Positions 24,867-64,000 of a stretch of 64,000 bases of DNA are shown in pieces. The number at the start of each line of letters is the position of its first letter. Positions within the stretch are counted from its first letter, which is position 1. Position numbers and translations under genes: made by a program. The DNA lies in assembly GCF_902652985.1 (NCBI RefSeq), contig NC_047016.1, positions 52,886,001 through 52,950,000 of the forward strand, given 5' to 3'. This DNA comes from Pecten maximus (Eukaryota). The notes under the pieces were generated by a model. It did no database searches. It saw only the letters and a program-made list of their open reading frames with translations, and was not told the DNA's origin.

Positions 24867-27800
24867 TCATGAACAGCGACAGACAGTCGACGGACAATGT
24901 GGAGGTACATGGTTACACGTGCTGTCACACCAGGAATCCGTGGCGACAATAGATACGGAAACACATGTCCGGCTACCGCTAGAGGGCGCTGGAGTTGTAG
25001 ATGGCGTGGTTGTCGTTGGCGTTGTTATCCGTGTTGCTGTGTTGGCTTCAGTTGTTGTCTGGACTTGATTTCCTGACGTAGGAATCCTTTCTGTTGTGGT
25101 TAAAATGGCTGCTGGTTTACCTGATGTTGATGTTTTTAAAATGGACGACAAAGTAGTATATATCTTAGTTTCTCTAGCTGTAGTGGGGGTCGAGTCAGTT
25201 ATTGTCGCCTTTGAATCTGTTGTTTTAACAGGTGCCGCTGTTGAAGGTGTTGTTTTTACAGGTGTCGGTGTTGAAGGTGTCGTTTTTACAGGTGTCGTTG
25301 TCCTACTTGTCGCTGATGTAGTGGGCGCTGTGTTGACTACTGCTCTATTTGAAATAGCTATATCTGAGCATGCATAGAATTCTTCTTGTGGTCCAAATCC
25401 TAAACCGTTTCCATTTTCATCAGTGCCCCAACTATTTCCTGAAATTACAAACATAAAATGTGAAATTTTAATTACTTAATAATTGTAAAAACAAACATTT
25501 GTTATAGCCATGGACATGCCAGTTCTTTGCAGTCAATTGAAAACAGAAATCTGTGACATCCACAAAGATAAATCGATGAGAACAAAATTGCAAAAACTAA
25601 TAACATCAAAAACTATTGGTTTACAGCACAATTCTGACTTTTACAGAATTATACATATCCGCTATTGGTTTCTCAAATTAAGAATTCTTTCTCTTTCAAA
25701 TCATTTAAGCATCGTCCTACGTGACATGCGTTATATTTAACTATGAAATTAGTTACATGGTTTTCACAAAAAAGTACCATTTTATAGATAATTTATTTAA
25801 TGATGATAATAACACATGCGATATAAAAAGTTATTTCATGGAAAATATGGCTACTTTTAAGTTATCACCTGTGAAAAAAAGGACCTAACATATCACACTA
25901 GCTTACCTGTATGGTATCGCCATTGAATGACACACTGGGAACACGTGACGTTCGATGGCAGGTCCAAAGCGATTGTTATATTACCAGGCTTTTTCCCGAT
26001 TTGATGTTTTGTCTCTCCTGTATTCGAGTTTGGAAGTAAATATTTTAGACACTCTTTTGTGATGGGTTTGGCCACATCGTTGTTTTCACAGAGACGGAAT
26101 TCAAAGAATCCGAGATGATTAGAAGTTATCTCGACGGTGATGTTGATGGTCGAACCCTTGGTATAATATTTTACGATAACACCCTTTGCATATTTTCCCC
26201 CAGCCTCGTTTTCCCTTGGATGTGGCTGGTCATAAGGGTCTCCGCAAACGCCACACTTGCCCCCGAGACTTTGTTGATGCTACAAAAGAAATTAAGAGAT
26301 ATGTCAACCCCATGCTGAATATACGGAACTGGAACTTTATAGAGAAGACAACAAAATGGCTCAGAGAGGCTCCCAAGCCTAACAGAAGTGTTCGATGGCA
26401 ATAAAAAGTGATGATATGTTTAAACACTTCAATGTAGTTAACTCTGTGGAAGGATTTGTGAAAAACATTGAACTGAGTTAAAGCTATTGTCATAAAATTA
26501 TAGCTACTGTAACGCCTACATCCTACAGACTGCCTGTTACAATAGATAAATGATGACGACAATAGTGTAGTTGTTATATCTAAGTTATATCTAATTAATA
26601 GTTTGGTTTGTTTTTGTTTAACGTCCTATTAACAGCCAGGGTCATTTAAAGACGTGCCAAGTTTTGGAGGTGGGGGGAAGCCGGAGTACCCGGAGAAAAA
26701 CCACCGGGCTACGGTCAGTACCTGGCAACTGCCCCACGTAGGTTTTGAACTCGCAACCCAGAGGTGGAGGGCTAGTGATAAAGTGTCGGTACACCTTAAC
26801 CACTCGGCCACCACGGCCCCATAATCTTATTAATACCAACACATGAAAAACAATAATAGCAGCGCCATTAAAATGATCACGTATCAAACAGGGAAATGTG
26901 TACCAAATATGGAAGGGGAACACGATATTCGTTCTTTGTGAACAGCTTAATTCTCTGGAGGGTGGTACATAATTACTCGTTTTCGTTTATATAGCCTAGT
27001 AGTGTATAAGGTAAGATTGACTAGGTACACGTGTCCCGATGGAGTATCGAACTTCCTTGTACACAGACCCCATGCGTTTAGTTAAGGAATATCATATTTC
27101 ATTTAACCATGCCCGAGTTACATCCGGGTCGACAGGTGTGACTATTTGTATGTAAAATAAGTCAACGAGAAGTCTACTGTTAACATGTAAGTCGATATAC
27201 ATGTTTGTATATCAATTATGTTTTTGTTGAGACTAAAAAGTCGGCTATTTTAAGGTGAAACAATCCCAGAACTATTAGATATGGCGAATACAACCATTAC
27301 AACACCGACTATAATGTTTTTACTTTTATTTAGCTCTCTGTAATCAAATACAAAAGGTTGTCGCTTTAGAAACAAAAGAGAGACACCATCGTTAGTAATT
27401 TCTTTTGAATGTTCTACCGTTTTTCTAATTTTTTCCTTGTGTGTCATTTTTTTTATGTTTGATAGATATCAATACAACTAAAATACAATTTTATTTGACA
27501 TTTAACCCCGCAATATGGATATCATCATGGTTATTTATCAAACAGTATACAGNNNNNNNNNNNNNNNNNNNNNNNNNNNNNNNNNNNNNNNNNNNNNNNN
27601 NNNNNNNNNNNNNNNNNNNNNNNNNNNNNNNNNNNNNNNNNNNNNNNNNNNNNNNNNNNNNNNNNNNNNNNNNNNNNNNNNNNNNNNNNNNNNNNNNNNN
27701 NNNNNNNNNNNNNNNNNNNNNNNNNNNNNNNNNNNNNNNNNNNNNNNNNNNNNNNNNNNNNNNNNNNNNNNNNNNNNNNNNNNTTTAATCAACTTACTGC

Positions 27801-27968
27801 GAATCCCCCACAATACAGTTCGTTGTCATTGAAGTTTTTCGGTGTATCGAACCCACCTCTCCAGGCACTGCTTCTTCCCAATGGGTTTAAAAGGCGACCA
27901 TGACCATTAATAGTCATAAACACGGAAACGGTCACCTGGAAGAAAAATGTCAACTCGAACGACTGCAT
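24867..27968 (-). CDS. AA15-type lytic polysaccharide monooxygenase (LPMO-A; chitin-binding type-4 domain) with Thr-rich linker and C-terminal 6-Cys module, 371 aa; exons 27968-27798, 26279-25907, 25438-24867
   Basis: 22-aa signal peptide, then HGRLLNPLGRSSAWRGGFDTPKNFNDNELYCGG (His1), CGVCGDP, ENEAGGKY, TSNHLGFFEFRLC (His2), TCSQCVIQWRY, GNSWG..GPQEEFYACSDI; 171+373+572 nt in frame with canonical splice sites. Confidence 0.95.
26601..26820 (-). mobile_element. tRNA-derived SINE (V-SINE-like core), in intron 1 of LPMO-A
   Basis: Reverse complement of the copies at 36660, 39526 and 59127; A box, B box and AAAC-type tail; imperfect TSD ATCT(A/T)ATTAATA. Confidence 0.9.
27553..27783. other. Assembly gap (N run) in LPMO-A intron 1
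   Basis: Run of n. Confidence 1.
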
Positions 27969-28029
27969 CTTACTTAATTTGTTGGTACGTCTCTTGATCT
28001 GGACATACTGTACTTTGTCAGACAAGGGG

Positions 28030-28037
28030 TTTATATA
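28030..28037 (-). promoter_or_regulatory. Candidate TATA box (TATATAAA) of LPMO-A
   Basis: About 60 nt upstream of the ATG at 27968 on the minus strand. Confidence 0.5.
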
Positions 28038-42360: not shown

Positions 42361-43479
42361 TTATCAAATTTCTGAATAATTGTATATGCCATCATGTGAC
42401 TATGTTATTGATTATTATTTGGTTATTATTATGAGAGAAGTCGTTTAAAAGTTGTTAAACTATGCTGACGTTGACAATATAGTAAAATCTATCGTTAAAC
42501 AGTATATTTATTAAACAAGATTTCGTAGTAAATCTTAAGATATCAATACAATTATACAAATACAGAAAAATACATGAAATGGTCCAAAGGATTTTTTAAT
42601 CAAAGTCAAATTCACGAATACCTTGAGTAAATGGAGAAAATTCATTCAACTTTAAATTTATTTGCCAAAATTACTATACAGTTTTCAAACATACTTGTAA
42701 CTAGAACTAGTTCGTGATCAATGATCGATGATAACATCTCGAATATTTCACAAAAGAAAACTCTCATCTATTGATTCGTTATGAGAAATTAACCATGATT
42801 CTTATTTTCGCACGCAAGAAAAAACCAAAGTCTTAGTGAAATCAACTCAAAGTCAATAAGGGCAAGGTATGAATGATAATAATAAATGATAATACCCCCC
42901 CCCCCCAAAAAAAAACAACAACAAAAAACAAAAAAACAAACAACAACAAAAAAACAAACAAAACAAAAACAAAAACAGAAACAAAAGACAGAGAATGATA
43001 CCAGGATTTATCGAAATTGTATTTTACCTGTAAATTGTATTGTACCTGTAAAATATTGGGGCAACAATTTGAGTGAGAATCGAGAAATCATGAAGCAGAA
43101 TAGTACCAGACTTTATCGGAATAGTTTGGAAACAATGGGACAATACTTATTGTGATAAGTACATTCGACCCTGATTACTGTCGTCATACTGTATTGAGAG
43201 TTCTAAATGGTTAATTGGTTTTCTGACCCAACTGTGAGTTATATCTAATGCATTGCTTGGGGCTACCTCTGTAGTAAGTAAAGAAGGGATTCTCGACAAA
43301 GGTGTCAAGCTACCTCTCATAAAAGGAAACAGGTTAGTCGATTTCGCTTTTCAATGCATTATTCAACATATATATTTGATGCTTTTATATTTTACATGAT
43401 GATGCATGGGTGTCGCCTGAATGCTCACTTTCTCTGTGGGAGGAAGGAGTGTACCAGAGAACAATAGAACAATAGAACA

Positions 43480-45200
43480 TATAAAACATGTATGTAAATA
43501 TCAACTCCAACTATTGTAGAGCTAGTGAACTAAATGAAACCGATTTTTTCGATGATTTTCAAAACATTGCTGCAACTAGCCAAAACATAAACGAAGATGT
43601 AAATGATTTTTCACAAGAACATTGCATTACATGTAACTACCCAAATGAAATATTTGAAGACTTAAATATAACAGAGGCTAAAATAGATTGTACAACACAG
43701 AATTCAATATAAATAAGGCATATTGTGCCGATGGAATTTTTAATTAATATATGATTGAAATTAAGACGGTTTTGATGCCGTGCTTCGTTATTATATTTCA
43801 TAATGTACTTGCATCCGGGCGCTTTCCGTAAACATGATCAAAAGGTAATATTTTGCCAGTCTTTAGGAAGGGGGATACACATAATTTCAATATTTATATT
43901 TACAGTGATATTGTTTTAGTTAGCGGTTTCGGAAAACTTTTTACGTCAATTATTGATAAATAATTGATGCTCAATTTAGCTTTAGAAAACAAATCTCTCA
44001 AAGATTGACGTTATATTTGGATTGCAGTTCTTAATTAATCTTGGTCTAAAAAATCAGAAACGATCTATATATTATATTATTGTTTTATTAATTATACAAA
44101 GGAATTTTACTTTATCAATCCACAAAACATGTGGTTCAAATCAATTAGAGAAGGAATTGATGGAAAGTTGTAATTCAAGTGCTAATTAGGTCATTGTATA
44201 ACGATGTAAAATATTGTGTTGAGCATACTGGCTCATTATCTGATTATTATAATTGTGATAACGGAATGTTTCTATGGGATTTTCCATCTCCCTTATTGTT
44301 CTCGTTACAAGACATGTTCAATTCTTCAGAAATATGAAAAAAGTGGGATTTAAGAGTCAATACGAAGAAAACAAAAGTTCTAATATTTAGTAAGTTGGTA
44401 TTTTGAGAAACAACGAAAATTGGATAAATAACAGTATTGTTTAGAAATCTGGGACTTTCATCAAGCGGCTGGCGTTGAAACTTTATATGCCACATTCTGT
44501 TAGGAATTTCTCGGTGAACGTAAAAATGTAAAACACTTGTGATGTTATGGTTTATGTAGAGTTTAGATATTGACACGGTTAAGGAAATTAAGCATTTTAA
44601 GAAAATGTAATTGCTGATAATTGTACTTTAAGATCATATTATAAAGTAATTTTAGAAAATGACGATAAACAGGCATTACATATCAACAATGAATTATATA
44701 GAATGTAACATCAACCTATATATAAAGGTGTCAGATTTGTAAAGAGAAGATTGCATTGAACAAATAACATCGTCAACCTTTTAGTGAATATCAGAACATA
44801 TTCTGTGGCCTGTGTATATGAAATATGACTGTGTGAAAAAGAAAGCTTCGATATTAAATCAATTAGTATAATCCAAGTTCCTAGTGAAAAAGCAAATGGA
44901 TTGGACAAAAGTTTAAACAACTTATGATGTCCTTTCCGTAACAATTCACGCAACAGATTTATACTATTCTTGGATTTTAACGAAGCCGGGGATAAAGAAA
45001 GAAAGGGGAAGACTATACACGTAACACCAGCAACAACAGAATGTGTTTTGTAAGATGAAGAACATGTATGTGGTTGATCTGATTTTGTCGACGTAGGTAT
45101 ACTGCTGTTCAAAAACACAAAACCTTCTGCTTTCTGAAGAGCATTGATGACACCCCCACAGCTTTTATAAACAATTGATCAAAAGACAAATCCCAATTCG
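43480..45200 (+). mobile_element. Heavily decayed LINE ORF2 (reverse transcriptase) remnant
   Basis: Fragmentary motifs GNILPVFRKGD (~43843) and VNTKKTKVLIF (~44356), plus a C-terminal R..R.C....EEH zinc-knuckle-like remnant (~45010-45070); many stops and frameshifts. Confidence 0.6.
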
Positions 45201-45904
45201 CTCTCTTATAATAAACAGCGTTAGTAAAGTTAGTACAGTATCTTAAACTATAATTGTTTCAACATGTCTTAAGACACTGTATATAAATTATATGATTTAC
45301 ATTCAACTTATATTGATAAGAAATCCCTCGATCCTTCAATGGTATTTAGCTCGTTCATTCTACTATACTGTAAATATAATCCTATGGATTTTGTTAGTTT
45401 TTGCATCACAGTACATAATGAACATGGCGTCATATTTTTCTGTCAAGTATTTATTCTTCCTTCACTTTAACTGTATTGATAAAGAAATTTAGCATTTTTT
45501 TTGTGGAATTTAGAACATTTAAAATATGTTCACGCAAAAAGCAATATCATGGCTTCATGACATTTAATTCATAACGAAAGAATAATAACTCTTCTCGCAT
45601 CTTCTATCCTAGCAAGTTTTATAATCATCACTATAAGTTTTTTAATGTCAAATAATCTAAACGACATTTTGGATCAACGATTATTCCGGAATGATAAGAA
45701 TTTTTTTTCATGATTTGGTAATCTTCAGCACGATTTGGTTTGGTTATAGCATCCTTGAAACGTTCCCGATTTATTCTTCAAGAGGAAGTGCATCAGATCA
45801 TAGGCATGCTTTCATTTGTGTGAATTTAATCCCTTAACGTAACTATAGTCGGCAATTATTATCTCTAATTTAATTTTAGATACCACGCTGTCAGATTGCT
45901 GAGC

Positions 45905-48900
45905 ATGGTTTTTGGTAGCTTGGTATTGGTTTTCTGTATATGGATGAATTTCGTCCCAGATGTTGTTCGTGGAAACAGCCGGATGTTTGAACTTCTCGGG
46001 AGAGATGTCAAGCAGGGGGATGGCATTGCTACACATGTTGGCTTTCAAGACAACGGACTAAGCCGTAGTGAACAGAACGTAAAGTATTTTAATTTGAAAA
46101 AATTAAACCTACTTTTATATCGAGATTAAGATGTTTTGTCAGCGTTAAAATATTTTGTTGTCTTAATCATAATTCTATACACCTCTATGCAAAATCATCA
46201 TGTTTGGCTATAAATAACTCCTTGTCCTTACTGAAGTCAACTTGTTTTGAGAAAAATGACGTAATGAGGTAAAACTGATATTTCTCATCAGTGTTTATCG
46301 ATGAATGTGACTACTGATAGCAGATTATTCCGGGTTTATTAAAAGAGAAAAGCTGTAATAAATCTCCTGTTATCTTGATTACTAGAAATCTTTAGAGGTC
46401 TCTAATGGAGCTTGTGGATTATGCAGAAACCCATTGGGACAAGGTGGAAAGCAAAACGAAACTTATGAAACAATTTTCCCAGAGATAACTTCAGAAGGCA
46501 ATATCATGTGGACGATCATCGGAATCAAAATACAGATTACATCCGACAGCGACGGTTTCCTCGAGTTCTTTCTTTCTGAAACTGACGTGAAACAAAGAAA
46601 TACTATGAACTGTTTGAAACATTTATTGGTTAATCCGGAGACGGGAGGGACAAGATACCCTGTTACAGCCTCTCAACAGTACATCGCTGTGTCTGCCAAG
46701 CTGCCCGAGAACGTCACGTGTTCCCAGTGTGTCTTACAGTGGAGGTACGCCACAGGTAAGTGTTATCATAGTCACGTCTCCCCCGTGTGTCTTACAGTGG
46801 AGGTACCACACAGGTAAGTGTTGTCAGAGTCACGTGTTCCTAGTGTGTCTTACATTGGAGGTACCACAAAGGTAAGTGCTGTCAGAGTCACGTGTTCCTA
46901 GTGTGTCTTACAGTGGAGGTACCACACAGGTAAGTGCTGTCAGAGTCACGTGTTCCTAGTGTGTCTAAGAGAAGAAGTACTACACAGGTAAGTGTTATCA
47001 TATTCACGTGTCCCCCGTGTGTCTTACAGTGGAGGTACCACACAGGTAAGTGTTATCAGTCACGTGTTCCTAGTGTGTCTTACATTGGATGTACCACACA
47101 GGTAAGTGTTATCATAGTCACGTATCCCCCGTGTGTCTTACAGTGGAGGTACCACACAGGTAAATGTTATCAGTCACGTGCTTCCAGTGTGTCTTACTGT
47201 GGAGGTACCACACAGGTAAGTGCTGTCAGAGTCACGTGTTCCTAGTGTGTCTTACAGTGGAGGTACCACAAAGGTAAGTGCTGTCAGAGTCACGTGTTCC
47301 TAGTGTGTCTTAGAGTGGAGGTACCACACAGGTAAGTGCTGTCAGAGTCACGTGTTCCTAGTGTGTCTTACAGTGGAGGTACCACAAAGGTAAGTGCTGT
47401 CAGAGTCACGTGTTCCTAGTGTGTCTTACAGTGGAGGTACCACAAAGGTAAGTGCTGTCAGAGTCACGTGTTCTTAGTGTGTCTTAGAGTGGAGGTACCA
47501 CACAGATAAGTGTTATCAGTCACGTGCTCCCAGTGTGTTTTACAGAGGAGGTACCACACAGGTAAGTTTTATTAGAGTCACGTGTTCCTCGTGTGTTTTA
47601 CATTGGAGGTACCACACAGGTAATTTTTTTAGAGTCACGTGTTCCTCGTGTGTTTTACATTGGAGGTACCACACAGGTAAGTGCTGTCAGAGTCACGTGT
47701 TCCTAGTGTGTCTTAGAGTGGAGGTACCACACAGGTAAGTGTTATCAGAGTCACGTGTTCCTAGTCTGTCTTACAGTGGAGGTACCACACAGGTAAGTGT
47801 TATCAGTCACGTGTTCCTAGTGTGTCTTAGAGTGGAGGTACCACACAGGTAATTTTTTATAGAGTCACGTGTTCCTCGTGTGTCTTAGAGTGGAGGTACC
47901 ACACAGGTAAGTGCTGTCAGAGTCACGTGTTCCTAGTGTGTCTTAGAGTGGAGGTACCACAAAGGTAAGTGCTGTCAGAGTCACGTGTTCCTAGTGTGTC
48001 TTAGAGTGGAGGTACCACACAGGTAAGTGCTGTCAGAGTCACGTGTTCCTAGTGTGTCTTACAGTGGAGGTACCACACAGGTAAGTGCTGTCAGAGTCAC
48101 GTGTTCCTAGTGTGTCTTACAGTGGAGGTACCACAAAGGTAAGTGCTGTCAGAGTCACGTGTTCCTAGTGTGTCTTAGAGTGGAGGTACCACACAGGTAA
48201 GTGCTGTCAGAGTCACGTGTTCCTAGTGTGTCTTACAGTGGAGGTACCACAAAGGTAAGTGCTGTCAGAGTCACGTGTTCCTAGTGTGTCTTAGAGTGGA
48301 GGTACCACACAGGTAAGTGCTGTCAGAGTCACGTGTTCCTAGTGTGTCTTACAGTGGAGGTACCACAAAGGTAAGTGCTGTCAGAGTCACGTGTTCCTAG
48401 TGTGTCTTACAGTGGAGGTACCACAAAGGTAAGTGCTGTCAGAGTCACGTGTTCCTAGTGTGTCTTACAGTGGAGGTACCACAAAGGTAAGTGCTGTCAG
48501 AGTCACGTGTTCTTAGTGTGTCTTAGAGTGGAGGTACCACACAGATAAGTGTTATCAGTCACGTGCTCCCAGTGTGTTTTACAGAGGAGGTACCACACAG
48601 GTAAGTTTTATTAGAGTCACGTGTTCCTCGTGTGTTTTACATTGGAGGTACCACACAGGTAATTTTTTTAGAGTCACGTGTTCCTCGTGTGTTTTACATT
48701 GGAGGTACCACACAGGTAAGTGCTGTCAGAGTCACGTGTTCCTAGTGTGTCTTAGAGTGGAGGTACCACAAAGGTAAGTGCTGTCAGAGTCACGTGTTCC
48801 TAGTGTGTCTTAGAGTGGAGGTACCACACAGGTAAGTGCTGTCAGAGTCACGTGTTCCTAGTGTGTCTTACAGTGGAGGTACCACAAAGGTAAGTGCTGT

Positions 48901-51900
48901 CAGAGTCACGTGTTCCTAGTGTGTCTTACAGTGGAGGTACCACAAAGGTAAGTGCTGTCAGAGTCACGTGTTCCTAGTGTGTCTTACAGTGGAGGTACCA
49001 CAAAGGTAAGTGCTGTCAGAGTCACGTGTTCCTAGTGTGTCTTAGAGTGGAGGTACCACACAGATAAGTGTTATCAGTCACGTGCTCCCAGTGTGTTTTA
49101 CAGAGGAGGTACCACACAGGTAAGTTTTATTAGAGTCACGTGTTCCTCGTGTGTTTTACAGTGGAGGTACTACACAGGTAAGTTTTATTAGAGTCACGTG
49201 TTCCTCGTGTGTTTAACAGTGGAGGTACCACACAGGTAAGGGAAACCATTTAACTATCATTTTATTGCATTTTTATGCTAAAAACAAACCTAAAAACATA
49301 AAAACATCGCAATTGAATCGTTTTCTGCTGTCATCGAATAATCTGTTCATGGATAGCTAATATCAAGTGAGTATTTTGTCAAAAACCTAGCCTGAATATT
49401 TCAGAAATACAGGAAAAAATATCCATTTTCATTACAATTGGAAATTATCGGCAAGTTTCAATGAGATGAGGCTCGCTCTCATTGGTAAAAAATCATTGTA
49501 AAATCTTATATCCTTACTGCTCATCGCTGCAATCAAAATATAAGTTTATCTTTTTGATAATAAGGGATTGCTTTAATGCCATTTTGATATCACATCCCTG
49601 ATCCGCCCGAGAATCTTGAAAGCAGCCTGAGGGCTGACCTAAAGGCTCAAGGGCGGCTGGTTAGAGGTCCGATTTCAAAAATGGTCATATTATAAAGTTT
49701 TATCCATATTTTTATATTTTTTTTCAAACACAACAAACATGACCTCACATTTTGATCTGTGAAAATCGTCACGTTCAATTGTGTTTTTCTCAACATTTTC
49801 ATATTTTTAACAAACGGTTCTCTGTCATCTGCATCCTCAAATCGATCCAATTAAACACGTCTTCTGCTATACATGTCCATCAGTCATCAGGGTCAACAAT
49901 TCCAGCTTCTAGCTCGCCTAATATCCCCCTCCCTCGATCATCTCTAAAAAAATAGACATCAAAACGCTAGGAACTGTACAAAGGTGTTCCACCATGTTCT
50001 CTTTTAGGTCCCATCCTCTTTAGCATCTTCAAAAATGACATCTTCCACTTTACGCAACACAGCAATCTATACATCTATCCAGATGACAATACTATAGAAA
50101 TTCACACACATCCTGGGACATCGTAAAAAAGCACTACAAACAGAAAGCAACTCACTTATTCACTGGTTCTCAGATAACCACATAAAGGCTAATCCAAGCA
50201 ATGCCAGTAGTTAACAAACCCCAACAATAAAACATCACCATTCAGATTGGTAATAACACTATATAATGTGAACCAGAAGTTAAACTTTTAAAGGTTACAT
50301 TAGATTTCAAGCATAAGTTCTTCACATATTTAGCAAATTATCTGCAAAAAAGTATCAAGACATCGTAACACACAAAAACGCATTGGCAAACACCTAAGCA
50401 GACTTGGCAAACACACGATATCACTCTTTTATCATTTCAAACTTCAATTTTTGTCCATTCACATGGCAGTTCTAAGGAACAACCAACGCAAAAAAAAAAA
50501 AAAAAAAAAATGTAAAAAAAATCAAGAAAGGGCACTCAAATAATAAACAGGAAAATACGCACGAAATTTAACTAGCCCGTTCAAAATTACCATCACTCAG
50601 AATAAGGAGACTCAGGAATTTGGCAATAGAAGTCTACAAAATCAAAACAAATGCCAACATACCTACATGACGTAATCAATATAACAGAAAAAGTATACAC
50701 ATTCAGATATCACAACACTGCAGATATACCACATGTTAGGACAGCAAACTATGACAAACACTCCTTTCAGTCAGAAACACCTAAAATCTAGAATGCACTA
50801 CCAAACCACTTCTGAACAACGACTTCACTCACACAATTCAAATCACTGACAAACAGCTGGTATGGGCCACAATGCAAATACAGCACGTGCAGACAAAACA
50901 CAGACATACCCACACACACAACATCCATTTTTTTGTAAGAGTCTAAAGGAACTTAATGCTTAATCAAATATCCATATTGTCAAGTGATTCTGCTATATCA
51001 AAGATATAACTCAACGAAATATATTTCCAAACAATCATTTTCTGCAAGCATTGATCTTTTTAATCAGGTAAATACATTTGTGTGCTTTTATGCTTTATTT
51101 ATTTTTATTTAATTTATTTTGTATTTGTGCATGTGTTTTACTGTTGCTATCGTTTTTAATAGCTAATTAGAGTTAATGTTTTTTATAATACGTACCGACT
51201 ATAAATAAAGTTTGAATTGATTTGAACCGAATTGAATCACCAGTTGGCATTGCTGTTTATATTTATGCAGACCACAAGTTCAACCCACACTAATAAGAAA
51301 AGTAAAAACGGAAACGGCGTTATTCGGGAACTTACATTACATTTGTGAAGTTTTATTATTTTGCATGTACATTGTTAGTGTTTTCCTGTTATAAAAAACG
51401 GCTTATTCAACTATTTGTTTATTTTTACATTAAAAGCGGTAAAGATAAGCCATAATGGCAAAATCCGGATTTTTACAGGGATGGTGATAACACTTTCGAA
51501 GGGGTTTGGTATCACTTTCAAGGGAGTGTGATAATACCATCAGAGGGTGTGACATTACTATCAGAGGGTGTGATATTACCATCAGAGGGTGTGATATTAC
51601 TATCAGAGGGTGTGATATTACCATCAGAGGGTGAGATATCACCATCAGAGGGTGTGATATTACCATCAGAGGGTGTGATATTACCATCAGAGGGTGTGAT
51701 ATTACCATCAGAGGGTGTGATATTACCATCAGAGGGTGTGATATTACTATCAGAGGGTGTGATATTACCATCAGAGGGTGTGGTATTACCATCAGAGGGT
51801 GTGATATTACTATCAGAGGGTGTGATATTACTATCAGAGGGTGGGATATTACCATCAGAGGGTGTGATATTACCATCAGAGGGTGTGATATTACCATCAG

Positions 51901-54900
51901 AGGGTGTGACATTACTATCAGGTGGTGTGATATTACCATCAGAGGGTGTGATATTACCATCAGAGGGTGTGGTATTACCATCAGAGGGTGTGATATTACC
52001 ATCAGTGGTCGTGATATTACCATCAGAGGGTGTGATATTACCATCAGAGGGTGGGATATCACCATCAGTGGGTGTGATATGACCATTAGAGGGTGTGATA
52101 TTACCATCAGTTGGTGTGATATTACCATTAGAGGGTGTTATATCACCATCAGTGGGTGTGATAATACCATTAGAGGGTGTGATATTACCATCAGTTGGTG
52201 TGATATTACCATTAGAGGGTGTTATATTACCATCAGAGGGTGTGATATGATCATCAGAAGGTGTTATATTACCATCAGTTGGTGTGATATTACCATCAGA
52301 GGGTGTGATATGATCATCAGAGGGTGGGATATTACCATCAGAGTTTGTGATATCACCATCAGGTGGTGTGATATTACCATCAGAGGGTATGATATTACCA
52401 TCAGAAGGTGTGCTATTACCATCAGTTGGTGTGATATTACCATCAGAGGGTGTGATATTACCATCAGAGGGTGTGATATTACCATCAGATGTTGTGATAT
52501 CACCATCAGAGGGTGTGATATTACCATCAGAGGGTGTGATATGATCATCAGAGGGTGGGATATTACCATCAGAGTTTGTGATATCACCATCAGGTGGTGT
52601 GATATTACCATCAGAGGGTATGATATTACCATCAGAAGGTGTGCTATTACCATCAGTTGGTGTGATATTACCATCAGAGGGTGTGATATTACCATCAGAG
52701 GGTGTGATATTACCATCAGAGGGTGTGATATTACCATCAGAGGGTGTGATATTACCATCAGTTGGTGTGATATTACCATCAGAGGGTGTGATATTACCAT
52801 CAGTGGTCGTGATATTACCATCAGAGGGTGTGATATTACCATCAGTGGTCGTGATATTACCATCAGAGGGTGTGATATTACCATCAGAGGGTGTGATATT
52901 ACCATCAGAGGGTGTGATATTACTATCAGAGGGTGTAATATTACCATCAGAGGGTGTGATATTACCATCAGTGGTCGTGATATTACCATCAGAGGGTGTG
53001 ATATTACCATCAGAGGGTGTGATATTACTATCAGAGGGTGTAATATTACCATCAGAGGGTGTGATATTACCATCAGAGGTCGTGATATTACCATTAGAGG
53101 GTGTGATATTACCATCAGAGGGTGTGATATTACCATTAGTGGGTGTGATATTACCATCAGAGGGTGTGATATTACCAGGACTGATGTTAATTTGTGATAA
53201 TTGTAGACATATCGCATATACAAAAAGTGTAGTAAATTTATGATACATTTCTATATTTCACCGGGAAAAATGCAATAATGTTTTATCATATACTGTACGG
53301 GTGTTAATGGCCTTGGTAAGTAAAATATGTTATAGAAATATTAATATCAATAATGCAGAAAGCCTGTGGAATCCGATATCGAGCTTTGTTATATTAGTAA
53401 AATAATATACTCTCGATCTAAGCATTATAACACTAATCCATTTGATATAAGCTTGTTATCCGAAATGTTATAAATGTAAAAAAAAAAAAAAAAAAAAGTT
53501 TGTGAAATATAATTAAAGGAATGAAACGATTGCATCATTTCGTTTTACTGTTGTAGGAAACCAGAAATTTAATTCTGAAGAGATATGTGAAGCATGCGAG
53601 GACCAGACAAAACTCTATGCATGTTCATATGTTGCTAAGACGTCAGGAGACACTGATCTGTCTCCTCTCACTGCCGACACAGCTTTCTCTTCTGATATTA
53701 ACAAACGATCCACTAAAGTATGTGTGTCTATTGTTGACGGAGTTCACGACATCTGGTGCGACCGCAACTGTAATCACAAGCCGCCATATTGCCCGATTAC
53801 TTTGTGTAAATGCACTACAACCTCAACTGCAACATCTATCACCAGCACCATATCTTCATCTACCAGCATCTCAACCAGTCCTTCCTCGACCCGGAGCAGT
53901 GTCACTTCCAGTCCTTCCTCGACCCGGAGCAGTGTCACTACCAGTCCATCCTCGACCCGGAGTAGCATCACTACCAGTCCATCCTCGACCCGGAGTAGCA
54001 TCACTACCAGTCCATCCTCGACCCGGAGTAGCATCACTACCAGTCCATCCTCCAGCTGGAGTAGCATCACTACCAGTCCATCCTCGAGCTGGAGCAGCAT
54101 CACTACTAGTCCTTCCATTGGCTGGATCAGTGTCTCTACCAATCCTTCATATAGAAAAAGTACTACCACCTCTACTACCACTCCATTCAGTAACTCTCTT
54201 TCAATTTCTACAAGGACCAGTCCGTCATCTAGTAGTTCCACGACCAGTTCGTATAGTTCTACTATTTCCGTTTCCAAGACTCCAACTACTTACTCGGCGC
54301 GTGGATGTATATCACTTTACCGCAAACGTTCAGGATTCCTGGTGTGAAGTAAACTGCAATTACGTACCGCCATTTTGTCCAGTTTCACTATGTAAATGTT
54401 TAATTATCCTCTCAACTACTACAACCACTACCATGCCTTCAACCACCACTGCCACTCCTTCTACAACAAGTACCACTCCCTCCACAACAAGTACCACTCC
54501 CTCCACTACAACTACCACTCCCTCCACTACAAGTACCACTCCTTCTACAACAAGTACCACTCCCTCCACTACAAGTACCACTCCCTCCACTACAAGTACC
54601 ACTCCCTCCACTACAACTACCACTCCCTCCACTACAACTACCACTCCTTCTACAACAACTACCACTCCCTCCACTACAAGTACCACTCCCTCCACTACAA
54701 GTACCACTCCCTCCACTACAACTTCCACTCCCACCACTACAACTACCATTCCCTCCACTACAAGTACCACTCCCTCCACTACAAGTACCACTCCCTCCAC
54801 TACAAGTACCACTCCTTCTACAACAACTACCACTCCCTCCACTACAAGTACCACTCCTTCTACAACAACTACCACTCCCTCCACTACAAGTACCACTCCT

Positions 54901-56039
54901 TCTACAACAACTACCACTCCCTCCACTACAAGTACCACTCCTTCTACAACAACTACCACTCCCTCCACTACAAGTACCACTCCTTCTACAACAAGTACCA
55001 CTCCCTCCACTACAACTACCACTCCCTCCACTACAAGTACCACTCCTTCTACAACAAGTACCACTCCCTCCAGTACAAGTACCACTCCCTCCACTACAAG
55101 TACCACTCCCTCCACTACAACTACCACTCCCTCCACTACAAGTACCACTCCTTCTACAACAACTACCACTCCCTCCACTACAAGTACCACTCCTTCTACA
55201 ACAAGTACCACTCCCTCCACTACAAGTACCACTCCCTCCACTACAACTACCACTCCCTCCACTACAAGTACCACTCCCTCCACTACAACTACCACTCCCT
55301 CCACTACAACTACCACTCCCTCCACTACAACTACCACTCCCTCCACTACAAGTACCACTCCCTCCACTACAAGTACCACTCCCTCCACTACAAGTACCAC
55401 TCCTCCAATACAACTACCACTCCCTCCACTACAAGTACCACTCCCTCCACTACAAGTACCACTCCCTCCACTACAAGTACCACTCCCACCACTACAACTA
55501 CCACTCCCTCCACTACAACTACCACTCCCTCCACTACAACTACCACTCCCTCCACTACAACTACCACTCCCTCCACTACAAGTACCACTCCCTCCACTAC
55601 AAGTACCACTCCCTCCACTACAAGTACCACTCCCACCACTACAACTACCACTCCCTCCACTACAAGTACCACTCCCTCCACTACAACTACCACTCCCTCC
55701 ACTACAAGTACCACTCCCTCCACTACAACTACCACTCCCTCCACTACAAGTACCACTCCCTCCACTACAACTACCACTCCCTCCACTACAAGTACCACTC
55801 CCTCCACTACAATTACCACTCCCTCCACTACAAGTACCACTCCCTCCACTACAAGTACCACTCCCACCACTACAACTACCACTCCCTCCACTACAACTAC
55901 CACTCCTTCTACAACAACTACTCCTTCCTCTGCCGGCTGCGTATCCCTTTTCCCTAGTGTTCCTAATTCTTGGTGTGAATTGAATTGTAACCACTCACCG
56001 CCCAATTGTCCAGGATATTTGTGTCAATGTACAACCTAA
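45905..56039 (+). CDS. AA15 LPMO-derived gene lacking the histidine brace (LPMO-C), with three 6-Cys modules and mucin-like Ser/Thr stalks, ~1008 aa if two 1-nt indels are corrected; exons 45905-46078, 46386-46755, 53557-56039; either a non-catalytic protein or a pseudogene
   Basis: Same exon phases and near-identical exon 1/2 lengths as paralogues. Signal peptide, then NSRMFELLGR (vs HGRMLDPPGR), TSDSDG (vs TSNHEG) and QTKLYACS (vs QEEFYACS). A +1 T at ~54316 and a -1 C at ~55402 interrupt exon 3; AATAAA at 56214. Confidence 0.75.
46713..49240 (+). repeat. 58-bp minisatellite derived from the LPMO-C exon 2/intron 2 junction, ~43 copies
   Basis: Unit GTCACGTGTTCCTAGTGTGTCTTACAGTGGAGGTACCACACAG|GTAAGTGCTGTCAGA (starts at 47231 and 47289) = last 43 nt of exon 2 + first 15 nt of the intron. 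Confidence 0.97.
49930..51237 (+). mobile_element. 5'-truncated, decayed CR1/L2-type LINE (RT C-terminal half + 3' UTR) in LPMO-C intron 2
   Basis: KGVPPCSLLGPILFSIFKNDIFHF...LYIYPDDNT resembles GVPQGSxLGPxLF...YADD; terminal W.GP.C motif (~50858); AATAAA followed by a (TTGAA)n-like tail (~51202-51237). Confidence 0.8.
51527..53177. repeat. 21-bp minisatellite (GTGTGATATTACCATCAGAGG), ~78 copies, LPMO-C intron 2
   Basis: Direct inspection. Confidence 0.97.
53874..54120 (+). repeat. 33-bp coding repeat (TSPSSTRSSIT), ~7 copies, first stalk of LPMO-C
   Basis: ACCAGTCCATCCTCGACCCGGAGTAGCATCACT units. Confidence 0.9.
54420..55925 (+). repeat. 21-bp coding repeat (TPSTT[S/T]T), ~70 copies, mucin-like stalk of LPMO-C
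   Basis: ACTCCCTCCACTACAA(G/C)TACC units between the 2nd and 3rd Cys modules. Confidence 0.95.
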
Positions 56040-59000: not shown

Positions 59001-59126
59001 TATTAAAAAAGAAGGCAATAAAACATTTGAAAACTGCTAGAGTAAATAGAAACTAGGACATACTGATCCATATGCACGCATTGATGAGATATCTCCTTAG
59101 ACGAATTAGTGTAAGATGTTTGGCAT

Positions 59127-59345: not shown

Positions 59346-59424
59346 GTAAGATGTTTGGCATGATAATAACAACGCTAAACATTAGTTATCTGTAGTATTT
59401 TGATTTAAACATATTTATTGCCCC

Positions 59425-59695
59425 AAAGTTTTCCAACTTATTAACGCCTTTTCCTCTAATATAATTCATGTAATAAGATTGACATAACATTCAACACGAC
59501 ATACAAATCATAATATACAATTAATATATTTTACTAAAACCTGTTGAGTTGAGCAGAGGATTAGGCACAAGTTTTCCAACTTATTAACGCATTTTCCTCT
59601 AGCACAATTCATATAATAATGTTTACATGATAACATTAAACGCGGCATACAAATTATAATATATGATTAAAATATTTTATTTAAAATCTGTTCCT
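59425..59695. repeat. Imperfect ~143-bp tandem duplication
   Basis: AAGTTTTCCAACTTATTAACGC..TTTCCTCTA occurs twice. Confidence 0.75.
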
Positions 59696-60528: not shown

Positions 60529-60618
60529 CCTGTATTTTAGATCTTGACCCAATCTAATTAAGATTATACCTGTATTTTAGATCTTGACCCAATCTAATTA
60601 AGATTATACCTGTATTTT
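60529..60618. repeat. 40-bp tandem duplication
   Basis: CCTGTATTTTAGATCTTGACCCAATCTAATTAAGATTATA x2. Confidence 0.85.
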
Positions 60619-60868
60619 CCATTCTTCTGTAATGCTCTCCGATACCATGCAATACAATGTATTTGAGTGTGTCATAGAGAAGCAGAAATTAACAAGTCTA
60701 GTTTTAATTAGATTGGATCTTGATCCGGATTTGACCTATTATATGGAGGATGTCGTTGATGAAGTAAGGTATCTGTAAAAAAATTGATTCTGAGGGTTTA
60801 TTTTCTTTGTTCCTGAAAACAGCTCTTTGGCGTTTGATTTCAGATTGAGGCCAGTAAAACCGGTGAAC

Positions 60869-63800
60869 ATGATGCCACTCCGATTGTCACTCGCTTGTGC
60901 TATGTTGATGAATATCCTAACTGTCGTGCATGGCCACGGCCGAATGTTGGATCCTCCCGGCAGAAGCAGCATGTGGAGAGTTGGCTTTAATACACCTGTA
61001 AATTTCGATGACAACGGCCTCAACTGTGGATACCGAAAGGTAGTTCCTTCATTAAAAAGCTGTGATTGAGAATCAATCTCATTATGGGTTTATTTTGATG
61101 TTCGACTGTAATGTATTGGTTTGGCAAAGACAACCTTTCTTGATTTCCGTACCTGTCCTTCACACAATGTTTGATCTAGTATCACTGACGAATGCTGCAG
61201 GAAAGTTATGTATTCGTGTCCAAGTCAAAATCAAAATAAAGACCAGACTATTTCATCATACGGTTATCGACTGTGAAATAGAAAAAAAAAAAAAAAAAAA
61301 GTGGACAGACGCAATATATCAATTCAGTAAACAAAAATAAAAATACAAATCAAGCCAAAAATTAAACGCGCACCGCATTGGAAATTATATAGCCCCAATA
61401 TTTGTTTCATAACCGACTGTCTTCTAGGCGTTCATGATATGACGATATAGGTACAATAGTTTCCTGTTCGGTTTGTTGTTATTTCATATCAATATCACCA
61501 AACCGTGCCCCTCTGTTTGCTGTTTAATTAATTATGTTGTCGTACGAGGCTGATTATATTGAAGAGCTTATCAAAAAAGCAAGAGAGACTTTGTAAAGCA
61601 CTTCAATTTTAACTTTAGTTATCTTAACGTTTAAGTGTTACATTTGAATAAAAACATTGTTGGCCATGTTGATCCGGTATATCATGTAAAACCCGAAATC
61701 AAGGAAGTTCATTTTCTTAAACGAGTCACTTATCTGTATCTTTACATATAATAATCACCAACGCGAACAGCTTACAAATAAGTTTTATGGTAACCGTGAT
61801 TCTTTCAATTTTTCCATTGCTATTCAAAGGCTAAGAATGATGTCGTTTGATTAAGACCACAGCGAAGTTTTATTGTCGGACTCTTATTTAGAAATATTGT
61901 ATTGCCTTATGCGATATGAATTATAACATATTTGATATTGTTGATATTTGTAATAGTTCCGTTGTCATCTACGTAACTCTTATGTGAGTTTGTGACTCAG
62001 ATTTGTATAGTGGGTGTCGTGGTGACCTAGATTTGTATGGTGGGTGTCTTAGTGAACTAGATTTGTATGGTGGGTGTCGTAGTGAACTAGATTTATATAG
62101 TGGGTGTCGTAGTGACATGGATTTGTATAATTGGTGTCGTCTTGACCTAGATTTGTATGGTTTGTGTCGTAGTGACCTAGATTTGTATAGTGGGTGTCGT
62201 AGTGACCTAGATTTGCATGGTGGGTGTCGTAGTGACCTAGATTTGTATAGTGGGTGTCGTAGTGACCTAGATGTGTATGGTGGTGTCGTAGTGACCTAGA
62301 TTTGTATGGTTAGTGTCGTAGTGACCTAGATTTATTTAGTGGGTGTCGTAGTGACCTAGATTTGTATGGTGGGTGTCGTAGTGACATAGATTTGTATGGT
62401 GGGTGTCGTAGTGACCGAGATGTGTATGGTGGTGTCATAGTGACCTAGATTTGTATGGTGGTGTCGTAGTGACCTAGATTTGTATGGTTGGTGTCGTAGT
62501 GACCTAGATTTGTATGGTGGGTGTCGTAGTGACCTAGACTTGTGGCGTCGATGAAGCAGAATACGCTAGCTTCTTCCGTAACACCTGGCCGTGTTCTCCT
62601 TAAAAAATGAAATGTTTGTTGATAGTTAACCTTCGTTGGATTGCTTAAGACTTTGTATTATGGTTTTATTACCACGTCAGTATGATTTTTGGGGATGTAT
62701 TTCATTATCATGAGTGTCACTTTATATACATTGTGGCGATATAGCATTTCTAACAAAAATGTTTATATTTTGACTTATTTTAGCAACCTCTAGACTTCTT
62801 CGGTGGCAATTGTGGCGTATGTGGGGACCCATCAGGACAAAATCCGAAGGAGAACGAGGCTGGGGGAAAATATGCAACGGGGATCATCTCAAAGTATTAT
62901 AAAATGGGGGAGAACATCAATATAAAAATACATATAACCTCAAATAATGAAGGTTTTTTCGAGTTCCGCCTCTGTGAAAATAATGACGTTAAAAAAAGAA
63001 TAACAAAGAGCTGCTTGAAACATTTATTGGTTAATCCGGAGACGGGAGAGACAAGATACCCTGTTACAGCCTCTCAACAGTACATCGCTGTGTCTGCCAA
63101 GCTGCCCGAGAACGTCACGTGTTCCCAGTGTGTCTTACAGTGGAGGTACCACACAGGTAAGTGTTATCAGAGTCACGTGTTCCTAGTGTGTCTTACAGTG
63201 GAGATACCACACATGTAAGTGTTATCAGAGTCACGTGTCCCCCGTGTGTCTTACAGTGGAGATACCACACATGTAAGTGTTATCAGAGTCACGTGTTCCT
63301 AGTGTGTCTTACAGTGGAGATACCACACAGATAAGTGTTGTCAGTCACGTGTTCCCCGTGTGTTTTACAGTGGAGATACCACACAGGTAAGTGTTATCAG
63401 AGTCACGTGTTCTCAGTGTGTATTACAGTGGAGGTTCCACACAGATAAGTGTTATCAGTCACGTGTTCCCCGTGTGTATAAGAGCGAATGTTCCACACAG
63501 ATAAGTGTTATCAACACACATCATTTTATCATCAATATGGTATTTGACAGTAGATATATAAGAGAAGAATAGTAGCCACTGTAAAGACAAATGAAAGCAA
63601 AAAGTGAATTTATAATGAGTTTATTTTAGTGTTGCATGACTGGATTGTCAGTCATGGCATTATGTTGAACTTGATAAAATTTCGAATAAGATTAGCGTTC
63701 AGTTATGTTACAAGAAGCTTATGATTTTTGTCTTTCGTCTTTGTTCTCTCTTTTAAACGAAGAAAAAGTGATTGAACAAAATGTAGTTGTAACCTTTCAT

Positions 63801-64000
63801 AACTGATACGTGGTTTGCTTGATATCACAGGAAAAAATGGCGGGATCTGTAAAACATGTGTCGACCAGGAAGAGTTTTATGCGTGTTCGGATATAGCCAT
63901 CAAAGACAGTGATTCACCGATCACGGAGGAAGACTCCGGTATATCTCCCCTTATAGCAGATACGGCGTTCATCCCTGACTCTAACCCGCGATCTCCTGGA
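60869..64000 (+). CDS. AA15-type LPMO-like gene (LPMO-D) with His2->Asn; exons 60869-61039, 62784-63156, 63831->64000 (runs off the window)
   Basis: 22-aa signal peptide, HGRMLDPPGRSSMWRVGFNTPVNFDDNGLNCG, CGVCGDP, ENEAGGKY, TSNNEGFFEFRLC, TCSQCVLQWRY, ICKTCVDQEEFYACSDI; frame open to the window end. Confidence 0.92.
61993..62540. repeat. 30-bp minisatellite (GATTTGTATGGTGGGTGTCGTAGTGACCTA), ~18 copies, LPMO-D intron 1
   Basis: Direct inspection. Confidence 0.95.
63114..63513 (+). repeat. 58-bp exon/intron-junction minisatellite of LPMO-D, ~7 copies (same family as 46713-49240)
   Basis: GTCACGTG...CAGTGGAG(G/A)TACCACACA(G/T)(G/A)TAAGTGTTATCAGA units starting inside exon 2. Confidence 0.93.

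What the first reader, a model, noticed from the sequence alone, without database searches (positions are those of the whole stretch)
24867..64000. Tandem array of four animal AA15 LPMO genes with graded dismantling of the copper histidine brace
Seen: four paralogues with the same coding-exon layout (35 mature codons in exon 1, a 370-373-nt exon 2, phases 0/1). Active-site positions are A: His1 (27902-27900), TSNH, QEEF; B: His1 (36203), TSNH, QEEF; D: His1 (60935), TSNN, QEEF; C: Asn (45974), TSDS, QTKL. Established: LPMO catalysis needs Cu bound by the N-terminal His and a second His, with an axial Phe/Tyr and a second-sphere Glu/Gln. Inference: the locus holds two enzymes, one half-disabled copy and one fully non-catalytic derivative, i.e. 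an enzyme-to-binding/scaffold transition. A role in a chitinous matrix (shell, gut or byssus) is plausible but not shown.
Basis: partly seen in the sequence, partly recalled or inferred. Interest (0 to 1): 0.9.

Follow-up and report, generated by a model that had tools for sequence, protein, structure and literature searches.

The report
Scallop LPMO array losing copper site
A cluster of five king-scallop genes for copper enzymes that attack chitin (AA15 LPMOs) includes two copies without the copper-holding histidines; one is conserved across scallop genera and the other is still transcribed and spliced, so an animal enzyme family appears to be turning into non-enzymatic secreted proteins.

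Summary
Genes A(-), B(+), C(+) and D(+) each have three coding exons with the stated sizes, phases and codon positions. A fifth intact copy, E, lies 12.7 kb beyond the window. Alignment to the solved Thermobia AA15 structure (5MSZ) fixes the three sites. A and B are His1/His91/Phe184, D is His1/Asn91/Phe184 and C is Asn1/Ser91/Leu184. Both assembly gaps are non-coding: one is in A intron 1, the other lies between B and C.

New evidence:
- D belongs to a clade without His91 in four scallop genera: Argopecten H/D/F, Ylistrum Q/S/F (two genes), Mizuhopecten R/R.
- D is 83% identical to its Argopecten orthologue, at least as conserved as the catalytic copies.
- C is transcribed and correctly spliced in contigs of four runs from one study.
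- C has open frames and dN below dS, but a very long branch, two lost core cysteines and two homopolymer frameshifts in its mucin tail.
- The 3' part of C exon 2 was recently converted from D, beside a 58-bp minisatellite.
- 7 of 30 AA15 loci in this genome lack His91.

Verdict: a real, probably undescribed pseudo-LPMO lineage, a new variant of a known kind. Its function is not shown.

The parts
27798..27968 (-). Gene A exon 1: signal peptide plus 35 mature codons, His1 at 27900-27902
   Evidence: identical to RefSeq P0178
25907..26279 (-). Gene A exon 2 (373 nt), His91 codon CAT at 26115-26117
24867..25438 (-). Gene A exon 3: Phe184 at 25377-25379, Thr/Ser/Pro stalk, 6-Cys module at 24873-24965, stop at 24867-24869
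27553..27783 (.). Assembly gap inside gene A intron 1 (non-coding)
   Evidence: orthologues are continuous across the exon 1/2 junction
36131..36307 (+). Gene B exon 1, His1 at 36203-36205
   Evidence: identical to RefSeq P0174
37042..37414 (+). Gene B exon 2 (373 nt), His91 at 37204-37206
38395..38840 (+). Gene B exon 3: Phe184 at 38451-38453, stalk, 6-Cys module at 38742-38834, stop
42205..42360 (.). Assembly gap, intergenic between B and C, about 1 kb upstream of the C leader exon
43301..43332 (+). 3' end of a non-coding leader exon of gene C, spliced to about 45880
   Evidence: loose end of the X3 contig, located in the window with a GT donor after it
45880..46078 (+). Gene C first coding exon (ATG 45905): Asn at 45974-45976 in place of His1; Arg at 46064-46066 in place of the conserved Cys
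46386..46755 (+). Gene C exon 2 (370 nt): Ser at 46548-46550 in place of His91; Ser at 46575-46577 in place of the conserved Cys
   Evidence: exon 1-exon 2 joint 46078>46386 seen in a contig
46611..46754 (+). Gene-conversion tract shared with D: 4 differences in 144 nt, against 38% difference upstream
46713..49240 (+). 58-bp minisatellite (about 44 units) that begins inside C exon 2 and fills the start of intron 2; 22 exact copies of the donor ACAG|GTAAGT
53557..54347 (+). Gene C exon 3 open frame: Leu at 53613-53615 in place of Phe184, 6-Cys module 1 at 53721-53813, Ser/Thr repeats, start of module 2, stop at 54345-54347
54290..56039 (+). Possible continuation of the C tail: rest of 6-Cys module 2, about 70 TTPSTTS-type repeats, 6-Cys module 3 (55938-56030). 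Readable only across two homopolymer frameshifts near 54310 and 55405
60869..61039 (+). Gene D exon 1, His1 at 60935-60937
62784..63156 (+). Gene D exon 2 (373 nt): Asn (AAT) at 62946-62948 in place of His91
63114..63513 (+). The same 58-bp junction repeat in D (7 units, only 2 with an intact AG|GTAAGT)
63831..64000 (+). Gene D exon 3 start (Phe184 at 63875-63877). It continues past the window to L031:1678 with two 6-Cys modules and Thr/Pro stalks

Best explanation
The locus is a five-gene tandem array of king-scallop AA15 genes, A(-), B(+), C(+), D(+), with E(-) just outside the window. All are of the type that carries a Thr/Ser/Pro mucin-like stalk and one to three small 6-Cys modules.

A, B and E keep His1, His91 and the axial Phe. 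Once the signal peptide is removed they should hold copper in the histidine brace and cleave chitin oxidatively. This is inferred from the family, not tested here.

D belongs to a clade found across scallop genera in which residue 91 is no longer His (Asn, Asp, Ser or Arg) and His1 is kept or lost depending on the species. The rest of the fold, the core cysteines, the surface aromatic at position 24 and the QEEF strand stay conserved. D most likely cannot form the three-nitrogen copper site. It is probably a non-oxidative secreted protein that still uses the flat LPMO face and its two 6-Cys modules on a glycosylated stalk to bind or organise a chitinous matrix (inferred).

C is an old duplicate of D that has diverged very fast. 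It lost all three copper-site residues and two core cysteines. It still keeps a signal peptide, open exons, canonical splice sites, intact 6-Cys modules and a spliced transcript. Its exon 2 was recently partly overwritten from D by gene conversion next to a minisatellite born from the exon-intron junction. C is most likely a mucin-like secreted protein whose LPMO-derived head is degenerate. It may already be on the way to becoming a pseudogene.
For: Family and site mapping:
- Pfam LPMO_10 on exon 2 of all four genes.
- 5MSZ alignments place His1, His91 and Tyr184. The roles of these residues are stated in PMC5823890.

D clade:
- Argopecten P0003 is H/D/F, Ylistrum P0173 and P0002 are Q/S/F, Mizuhopecten P0007 is R/R.
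- LPMO-domain identity between Pecten maximus and Argopecten: D 83%, B 80%, A 73%.
- The B/C/D clade has 98/96 support.
- The AlphaFold model of P0003 has pLDDT 85-98 over the domain and matches 5MSZ at TM 0.84, rmsd 2.6 A.

C:
- Contigs of 4 runs cover exons 1 and 2 but not the intron. One contig carries the joint 46078>46386 (GT..AG) and another a leader-exon junction.
- There is no stop and only one in-frame 3-nt deletion at 38% nucleotide divergence from D. A neutral simulation gives P(no stop) = 0.02.
- dN 0.35-0.50 against dS 0.8-2.0.
- No intron similarity to D remains.

Other:
- The 6-Cys pattern matches the insect group I LPMO15-1 repeat (PMC9156745; alignment).
- LPMO_10 is listed among oyster shell-matrix protein domains (PMC11464482).
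Against: - No copper-binding, activity, chitin-binding or protein-level data exist for any of these genes.
- The C evidence is low-depth contigs (2-5x) from one study whose libraries are only guessed to be RNA. No exon 2-exon 3 junction was seen.
- C lost two cysteines that are kept in nearly all of about 160 homologues.
- The only two polymorphisms seen in C are non-synonymous.
- The C tail needs two frameshifts to be read through.
- Neither C nor D was found as an annotated protein of 235-749 aa.
- dS is saturated, so dN/dS is rough. Gene conversion blurs the exon-2 tree.
- His1 with Asn or Asp at 91 might still bind a metal.
Confidence: 0.7

Rival explanations
1. C is a transcribed pseudogene. 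The head domain is simply decaying, the transcript is residual, and part of exon 2 looks conserved only because gene conversion from D refreshes it.
For: - The C exon-2 branch is about 35 times longer than the D branch.
- C lost all three copper-site residues plus two near-invariant cysteines.
- Pfam falls just under the cut-off (22.9 against 23).
- Two non-synonymous polymorphisms were seen in the contigs.
- Two frameshifts lie in the tail.
- No annotated protein was found.
- Contig depth is low.
Against: - All three exons are open, with exact exon lengths and GT..AG sites.
- P(no stop) is 0.02 under neutrality.
- Only one indel, in frame, at K about 0.53.
- dN is well below dS outside the conversion tract, including in 6-Cys module 1.
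- Splicing is correct, including a leader exon.
- The signal peptide and 6-Cys modules 1 and 3 are intact.
- Both frameshifts sit in homopolymers inside repeats, where long-read assemblies tend to make errors.
Confidence: 0.3
2. D and its Argopecten orthologue are still metalloproteins or enzymes. They would use the N-terminal amine and His1 together with Asn or Asp at position 91, giving an altered copper or other metal site with a changed reaction.
For: - His1, Phe184 and the QEEF motif are kept in D and in Argopecten P0003, where residue 91 is Asp, a possible ligand.
- The domain is as conserved as the catalytic paralogues.
Against: - The sister proteins in Ylistrum (Q1/S91) and Mizuhopecten (R1/R91) lack both ligands yet remain conserved, so the constraint on the clade cannot be metal binding.
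- No LPMO known to me works with one His. This rests on my knowledge of the family and on PMC5823890.
Confidence: 0.12
3. The substitutions are assembly or annotation artefacts, and all four genes are ordinary LPMOs.
For: The assembly has gaps and probable homopolymer errors nearby. His to Asn needs one base change.
Against: - Independent genomes of three other genera show non-His at residue 91 in the same clade.
- RNA-derived contigs reproduce the C exon sequence at 99% or more.
- C differs from D at 126 of 330 aligned bases.
Confidence: 0.02

Closest known systems
Thermobia domestica TdAA15A (PDB 5MSZ), founding member of CAZy family AA15 (PMC5823890)
   Same: Same fold and family. Exon 2 of A hits it at E 7e-31. 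The model of the D orthologue superposes at TM 0.84. A signal peptide exposes residue 1, and ten conserved cysteines are present in B.
   Different: TdAA15A is the catalytic domain alone with His1/His91/Tyr184. The scallop genes have Phe at 184 and add mucin stalks and 6-Cys modules. D lacks His91 and C lacks all three sites.
Insect group I LPMO15-1 (TcLPMO15-1, LmLPMO15-1; PMC9156745)
   Same: An AA15 domain followed by a C-terminal stretch with 6-cysteine repeats. The insect pattern is C-X15-C-X3-C-X6-9-C-X4-C-X1-C; here it is C-X11-C-X3-C-X6-C-X4-C-X1-C. Phe is the axial residue. The Atlas structural neighbours of the module include an arthropod LPMO_10 cluster.
   Different: The insect proteins all keep both histidines and are needed for cuticle turnover. 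The scallop proteins have long Thr/Ser/Pro stalks between modules, and two copies are brace-less.
Fungal 'Arg-AA9', an AA9 member lacking the histidine brace (Frandsen et al. 2019, J Biol Chem 294:17117; reference seen, paper not held)
   Same: A conserved clade inside an LPMO family in which the N-terminal His is replaced, as Arg replaces it in Mizuhopecten P0007, so that the copper site is gone while the fold is kept. This comparison rests on my own knowledge of that paper.
   Different: It is a different LPMO family (AA9) and kingdom. Here the second His went first, and the proteins carry mucin and 6-Cys tails.
Serratia CBP21 and other AA10 chitin-binding proteins
   Same: They are the next-best structural matches (2BEM, 2BEN). 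Historically they were described as non-catalytic chitin binders, which shows the flat face binds chitin on its own.
   Different: CBP21 turned out to be a true copper enzyme. D and C cannot form that site.

Membership tests
CAZy AA15 / Pfam LPMO_10 (PF03067) | Significant sequence match to the family profile and to a characterised member | tested here: met
   Exon 2 against LPMO_10: A 1.5e-12, B 2.5e-11, D 9.6e-11. C scores 1.5e-4, 22.9 bits against a cut-off of 23. Against 5MSZ: A 7e-31, D 1.8e-24, C 2.4e-8.
CAZy AA15 / Pfam LPMO_10 (PF03067) | Signal peptide whose removal leaves His as residue 1 | tested here: inconclusive
   Met in A, B, D and E, where the motif ..G|HG.. aligns to His1 of 5MSZ. 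Not met in C, which has Asn. The cleavage site is inferred by alignment and was not predicted with a dedicated tool.
CAZy AA15 / Pfam LPMO_10 (PF03067) | Second brace histidine (His91 of TdAA15A) | tested here: not met
   Met in A, B and E (TSNH). Not met in D (Asn) or C (Ser). D and C are therefore homologues of the family but not canonical LPMOs.
CAZy AA15 / Pfam LPMO_10 (PF03067) | Axial aromatic residue (Tyr184 or Phe) | tested here: inconclusive
   Phe in A, B, D and E; Leu in C.
CAZy AA15 / Pfam LPMO_10 (PF03067) | LPMO beta-sandwich fold | tested here: met
   The model of the Argopecten D orthologue P0003 matches 5MSZ at E 1e-19, TM 0.84. The scallop genes themselves were not folded, because exons may not be joined.
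CAZy AA15 / Pfam LPMO_10 (PF03067) | Copper binding and oxidative cleavage of chitin or cellulose | not testable with these tools
   Needs recombinant protein, EPR or ITC, and product analysis.
Insect-type group I LPMO15 (AA15 plus 6-Cys repeats) | C-terminal 6-cysteine repeat after the AA15 domain | tested here: met
   Pattern C-X11-C-X3-C-X6-C-X4-C-X-C in A (1 copy), B (1), C (3, one frameshifted) and D (2). The insect pattern comes from PMC9156745. Homology was judged by pattern and by Atlas structural neighbours only.
Insect-type group I LPMO15 (AA15 plus 6-Cys repeats) | Orthology to the single-copy arthropod group I gene | not tested
   No tree with arthropod group I to IV sequences was built.

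The most novel reading that the evidence does not exclude
Bivalves have repeatedly turned AA15 copper enzymes into conserved, non-catalytic secreted proteins. The scallop C/D clade is one such 'pseudo-LPMO' lineage kept for well over a hundred million years. Its function would be to bind or space chitin fibres in an extracellular matrix (shell organic matrix, periostracum, gut lining or mucus) through the old substrate face plus mucin-tethered 6-Cys modules. About a quarter of the AA15 paralogues in this genome would belong to this hidden non-enzymatic class.
Probability: 0.45. Interest if true: 0.7.

Novelty: new variant of a known kind. Interest (0 to 1): 0.55.

Why it matters
Animal AA15 LPMOs are counted and annotated as oxidative enzymes, and catalogues of mollusc carbohydrate-active enzymes or shell-matrix domains list 'LPMO_10' hits without checking the copper site.

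This locus shows that a sizeable share of scallop AA15 genes cannot hold copper in the usual way. At least one such lineage is as conserved as its catalytic neighbours. That gives a natural set for study, side by side in one array: intact enzyme, enzyme lacking one histidine, and fully brace-less copy. It could be used to ask what an LPMO scaffold does without copper, and how the loss of one ligand frees the other to drift.

It also shows gene conversion and a junction-derived minisatellite reshaping a young pseudoenzyme. In the papers I could search I found no description of brace-less AA15 proteins. The nearest precedent is the fungal Arg-AA9.

Tried and rejected
- **Joined models.** The spliced models were not joined. 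Every search, alignment and rate estimate was done exon by exon by reference. No full-length C or D protein was searched or folded.
- **The look-up of encoding contigs.** No DNA of the Argopecten, Ylistrum or Mizuhopecten orthologues could be fetched, so there is no synteny check and no branch dN/dS.
- **The search for homologous proteins with C exon 2.** Nothing among proteins of 68-215 aa. With P0003 as query, no Pecten maximus protein for C or D among proteins of 235-749 aa. This says nothing about longer models.
- **Representatives search.** The top hits P0001, P0005, P0006 and P0015 are repeat proteins that score by many short stretches. I rejected them as spurious.
- **6-Cys module and exon 3.** No Pfam hit at E up to 1. 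The Atlas found nothing by features. The module model (pLDDT 82, strand-helix-strand) has no PDB match by Foldseek or VIA-align. The CBM1-like idea rests only on one fungal esterase cluster among the Atlas structural neighbours and is not established.
- **Lost cysteines as one disulphide.** I asked whether the two cysteines lost in C are a single disulphide pair, which would suggest tidy loss. This is not supported. In two homologues the 'RLC' cysteine is lost together with the 'xCLKH' cysteine, which C keeps inside the conversion tract.
- **Literature.** Searches for brace-less AA15 or mollusc LPMO function found no such description, only LPMO_10 listed among oyster shell-matrix domains.
- **Expression of D** and the C exon 2-exon 3 junction could not be tested. 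Read laying allows one call and at most 6,000 letters here.
- The gaps were not filled.
Full report
**What is there.** The window is G000:C2:52886001-52950000 of a 918-Mb genome. Earlier notes of the scan call it king scallop. That fits, because two RefSeq Pecten maximus proteins equal my exon translations exactly.

Open frames and splice contexts give four genes with the same three-coding-exon plan. Exon 1 holds a signal peptide and exactly 35 mature codons (phase 0). Exon 2 is 373 nt in A, B and D and 370 nt in C (phase 1). Exon 3 holds the last strand of the domain, then Thr/Ser/Pro-rich stalks and small 6-Cys modules.

A fifth copy, E, lies on the minus strand 12.7 kb past the window end and is intact. 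No other copy lies in the first 24.8 kb of the window or in the 10 kb before it.

**The assembly gaps, tested first.** Gap 27553-27783 begins 8 nt after the GTAAGT donor of A exon 1, so it lies in intron 1. The orthologues from Argopecten and Ylistrum, and the RefSeq model, read without interruption across that exon junction. Nothing coding is missing there. Gap 42205-42360 lies between the stop of B and the leader exon of C. I did not fill either gap.

**Family and active-site mapping.** I searched each exon by reference.

- Exon 2 of A, B and D passes Pfam LPMO_10. C scores 22.9 bits against a cut-off of 23.
- The only solved relative is the Thermobia AA15 structure 5MSZ, hit at A 7e-31, D 1.8e-24 and C 2.4e-8.
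- The alignments put the first mature residue on His1, the last residue of TSNH on His91 and the F of QEEF on Tyr184.
- Sabbadin et al. state that His1 and His91 hold the copper, that Tyr184 is the axial residue, and that ten cysteines form five disulphides (PMC5823890).

So A and B are H/H/F, D is H/N/F and C is N/S/L.

**Is D an accident or a lineage?** A search of 1.8 billion representatives with C exon 2, the source names and a second search returned the scallop relatives.

| Species and protein | Residue 1 / 91 / 184 | Note |
|---|---|---|
| Argopecten irradians XP_069120050 | H / D / F | Same two 6-Cys modules and stalks as D |
| Ylistrum balloti LOC132543699 | Q / S / F | Adjacent to LOC132543700 |
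| Ylistrum balloti LOC132543700 | Q / S / F | |
| Mizuhopecten yessoensis OWF46338 | R / R / not read | The model runs into a repeat after exon 2 |

The B and A orthologues in these species keep H/H/F. On exon 2 the B/C/D clade is well supported at 98/96.

Within the LPMO domain D is 83% identical to its Argopecten orthologue. The figures for B and A are 80% and 73%. A model of the Argopecten protein is confident over the domain and superposes on 5MSZ at TM 0.84.

The simplest history is this. His91 was lost in the ancestor of the clade, and afterwards His1 was free to change (H, H, Q, Q, R, N). The fold stayed under constraint as strong as in the enzymes. This is inference from four genera, and gene conversion within species blurs the exon-2 tree.

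**Is C alive?** Contigs of four runs from one 2015 study were laid on 45000-46790. They cover exon 1 and exon 2 and nothing in the 307-nt intron. One contig carries the exact joint 46078>46386 (GT..AG). Another starts with 32 letters that lie at 43301-43332, followed by a GT, which marks a spliced non-coding leader exon. The libraries are only guessed to be RNA, but spliced contigs can hardly come from DNA. Depth is low (2-5x).

Outside a conversion tract C differs from D at 126 of 330 aligned bases, yet it has no stop and a single in-frame 3-nt deletion. Random mutation of D to the same distance leaves the frame open in 2% of trials.

| Region compared (C against D) | dN | dS |
|---|---|---|
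| Exon 1 | 0.50 | 0.77 |
| 5' part of exon 2 | 0.41 | 1.34 |
| First 81 aligned codons of exon 3, including 6-Cys module 1 | 0.40 | 1.6 |

These values are Nei-Gojobori estimates. Introns share no detectable similarity. Because dS is saturated the ratios are rough, but they are not near 1.

Several points count against C:
- Its exon-2 branch is 0.60, against 0.017 for D.
- It lost the exon-1 cysteine and the 'RLC' cysteine, both kept in nearly all of about 160 homologues.
- The two polymorphisms seen in the contigs are both non-synonymous.
- The tail beyond 54347 (rest of module 2, about 70 TTPSTTS-type repeats, module 3) can be read only across a +1 and a -1 shift, each in a short homopolymer. 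These may be assembly errors or real.

I put 'C makes a functional non-enzymatic protein' at roughly 0.55-0.65 and 'transcribed pseudogene' at about 0.3.

**Conversion and the minisatellite.** The last 144 nt of exon 2 differ at 4 positions between C and D, against 38% just upstream. The same point is the first unit of a 58-bp tandem repeat that runs into intron 2. It has about 44 units in C and 7 in D. Each unit copies the exon end and the donor. C has 22 exact ACAG|GTAAGT copies and D only 2. The Mizuhopecten model that runs into a repeat after exon 2 hints at the same feature there.

**Wider context.** Of 30 AA15 exon-2 loci in this genome, 7 lack His91: C, D, L020, L022, L024, L028 and L029. 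L028 and L029 also lack His1. Of 144 family representatives, 8 lack His91, including a Mytilus protein. Brace loss is therefore recurrent in bivalve AA15s and not special to this locus.

**The 6-Cys module.** Its pattern is C-X11-C-X3-C-X6-C-X4-C-X-C. This matches the repeat described in insect group I LPMO15-1 (PMC9156745). In this genome the B-type module is detected only in this array and in one paralogue on C15. It has no Pfam match. Its model (strand-helix-strand, pLDDT 82) has no PDB match. Atlas structural neighbours are an arthropod LPMO_10 cluster, haptophyte proteins and a fungal esterase cluster. I treat these as leads only.

**How it most likely works.**
- Shown: family membership, residue states, conservation of the D clade, splicing of C, the conversion tract.
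- Inferred: A, B and E are secreted copper enzymes acting on chitin. D and its orthologues cannot form the brace and act as non-oxidative binders or spacers of a chitinous matrix through the old substrate face, where the aromatic at position 24 is kept in every copy including C, together with 6-Cys modules on a glycosylated stalk. C is a mucin-like derivative with a degenerate head.

A shell-matrix role is only suggested by LPMO_10 being listed among oyster shell-matrix domains (PMC11464482).

**Novelty.** Five literature searches found no description of brace-less AA15 proteins. The nearest precedent is the fungal AA9 member lacking the brace. I saw its reference but the paper is not held, so the comparison rests on my own knowledge. 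Pseudoenzymes are common, so I rate this a new variant of a known kind, with interest 0.55.

**Limits.** The reads tool allowed one call, so D expression and the C exon 2-exon 3 junction are untested.

Noticed in passing
window 46713-49240 and 63114-63513: A 58-bp minisatellite whose first unit is the 3' end of exon 2 plus the donor site. C has about 44 units with 22 exact ACAG|GTAAGT donors. D has 7 units with only 2 intact. Use of a later donor would add 58 nt per unit and shift the frame.
   Followed up: partly
window 51518-53248 (-): A 576-aa ORF on the opposite strand inside C intron 2. It has a hydrophobic N-terminus followed by about 78 copies of a 7-residue GNITPSD-type unit (a 21-bp repeat) full of N-x-T sequons. 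It could be a nested secreted glycoprotein gene or just a translated minisatellite.
   Followed up: no
window 54290-54350 and 55380-55450: Two compensating frameshifts in the C tail: an extra T in a T-run inside 6-Cys module 2, and a missing C in a C-run inside the 42-bp repeat. Both look like typical long-read homopolymer errors, but they could be real.
   Followed up: partly
window 31859-35353: A 27-bp minisatellite of about 134 units between A and B, open in several frames on both strands. It is strongly AT-skewed.
   Followed up: no
L020, L022, L024, L028 (exon 1 in L037:8218-8430), L029 (exon 1 in L038:9164-9400): Five further AA15 paralogues elsewhere in the genome lack His91 (Leu, Ile, Met, Leu, Asn/Pro). 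L028 and L029 also lack His1 (Gln, and Glu with an extended N-terminus).
   Followed up: partly
L032:3220-6742 (-) = G000:C2:52962220-52965742: The fifth array member, E, with an intact His1/His91/Phe184. No B-type 6-Cys module was detected near it.
   Followed up: partly
P0008 (Lingula anatina XP_023932961): A brachiopod AA15 homologue with Asn in place of His1 but His91 kept. This is the opposite order of loss from the scallop D clade.
   Followed up: no
window 61992-62543: A 30-bp tandem repeat (18.5 units) in D intron 1. D intron 1 is 1,744 nt and C intron 1 is 307 nt.
   Followed up: no
window 4703-5005 (+): An exon-like ORF ending in an SH3-type motif (..[22 protein letters not shown]..), part of an unrelated neighbouring gene upstream of the array.
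   Followed up: no
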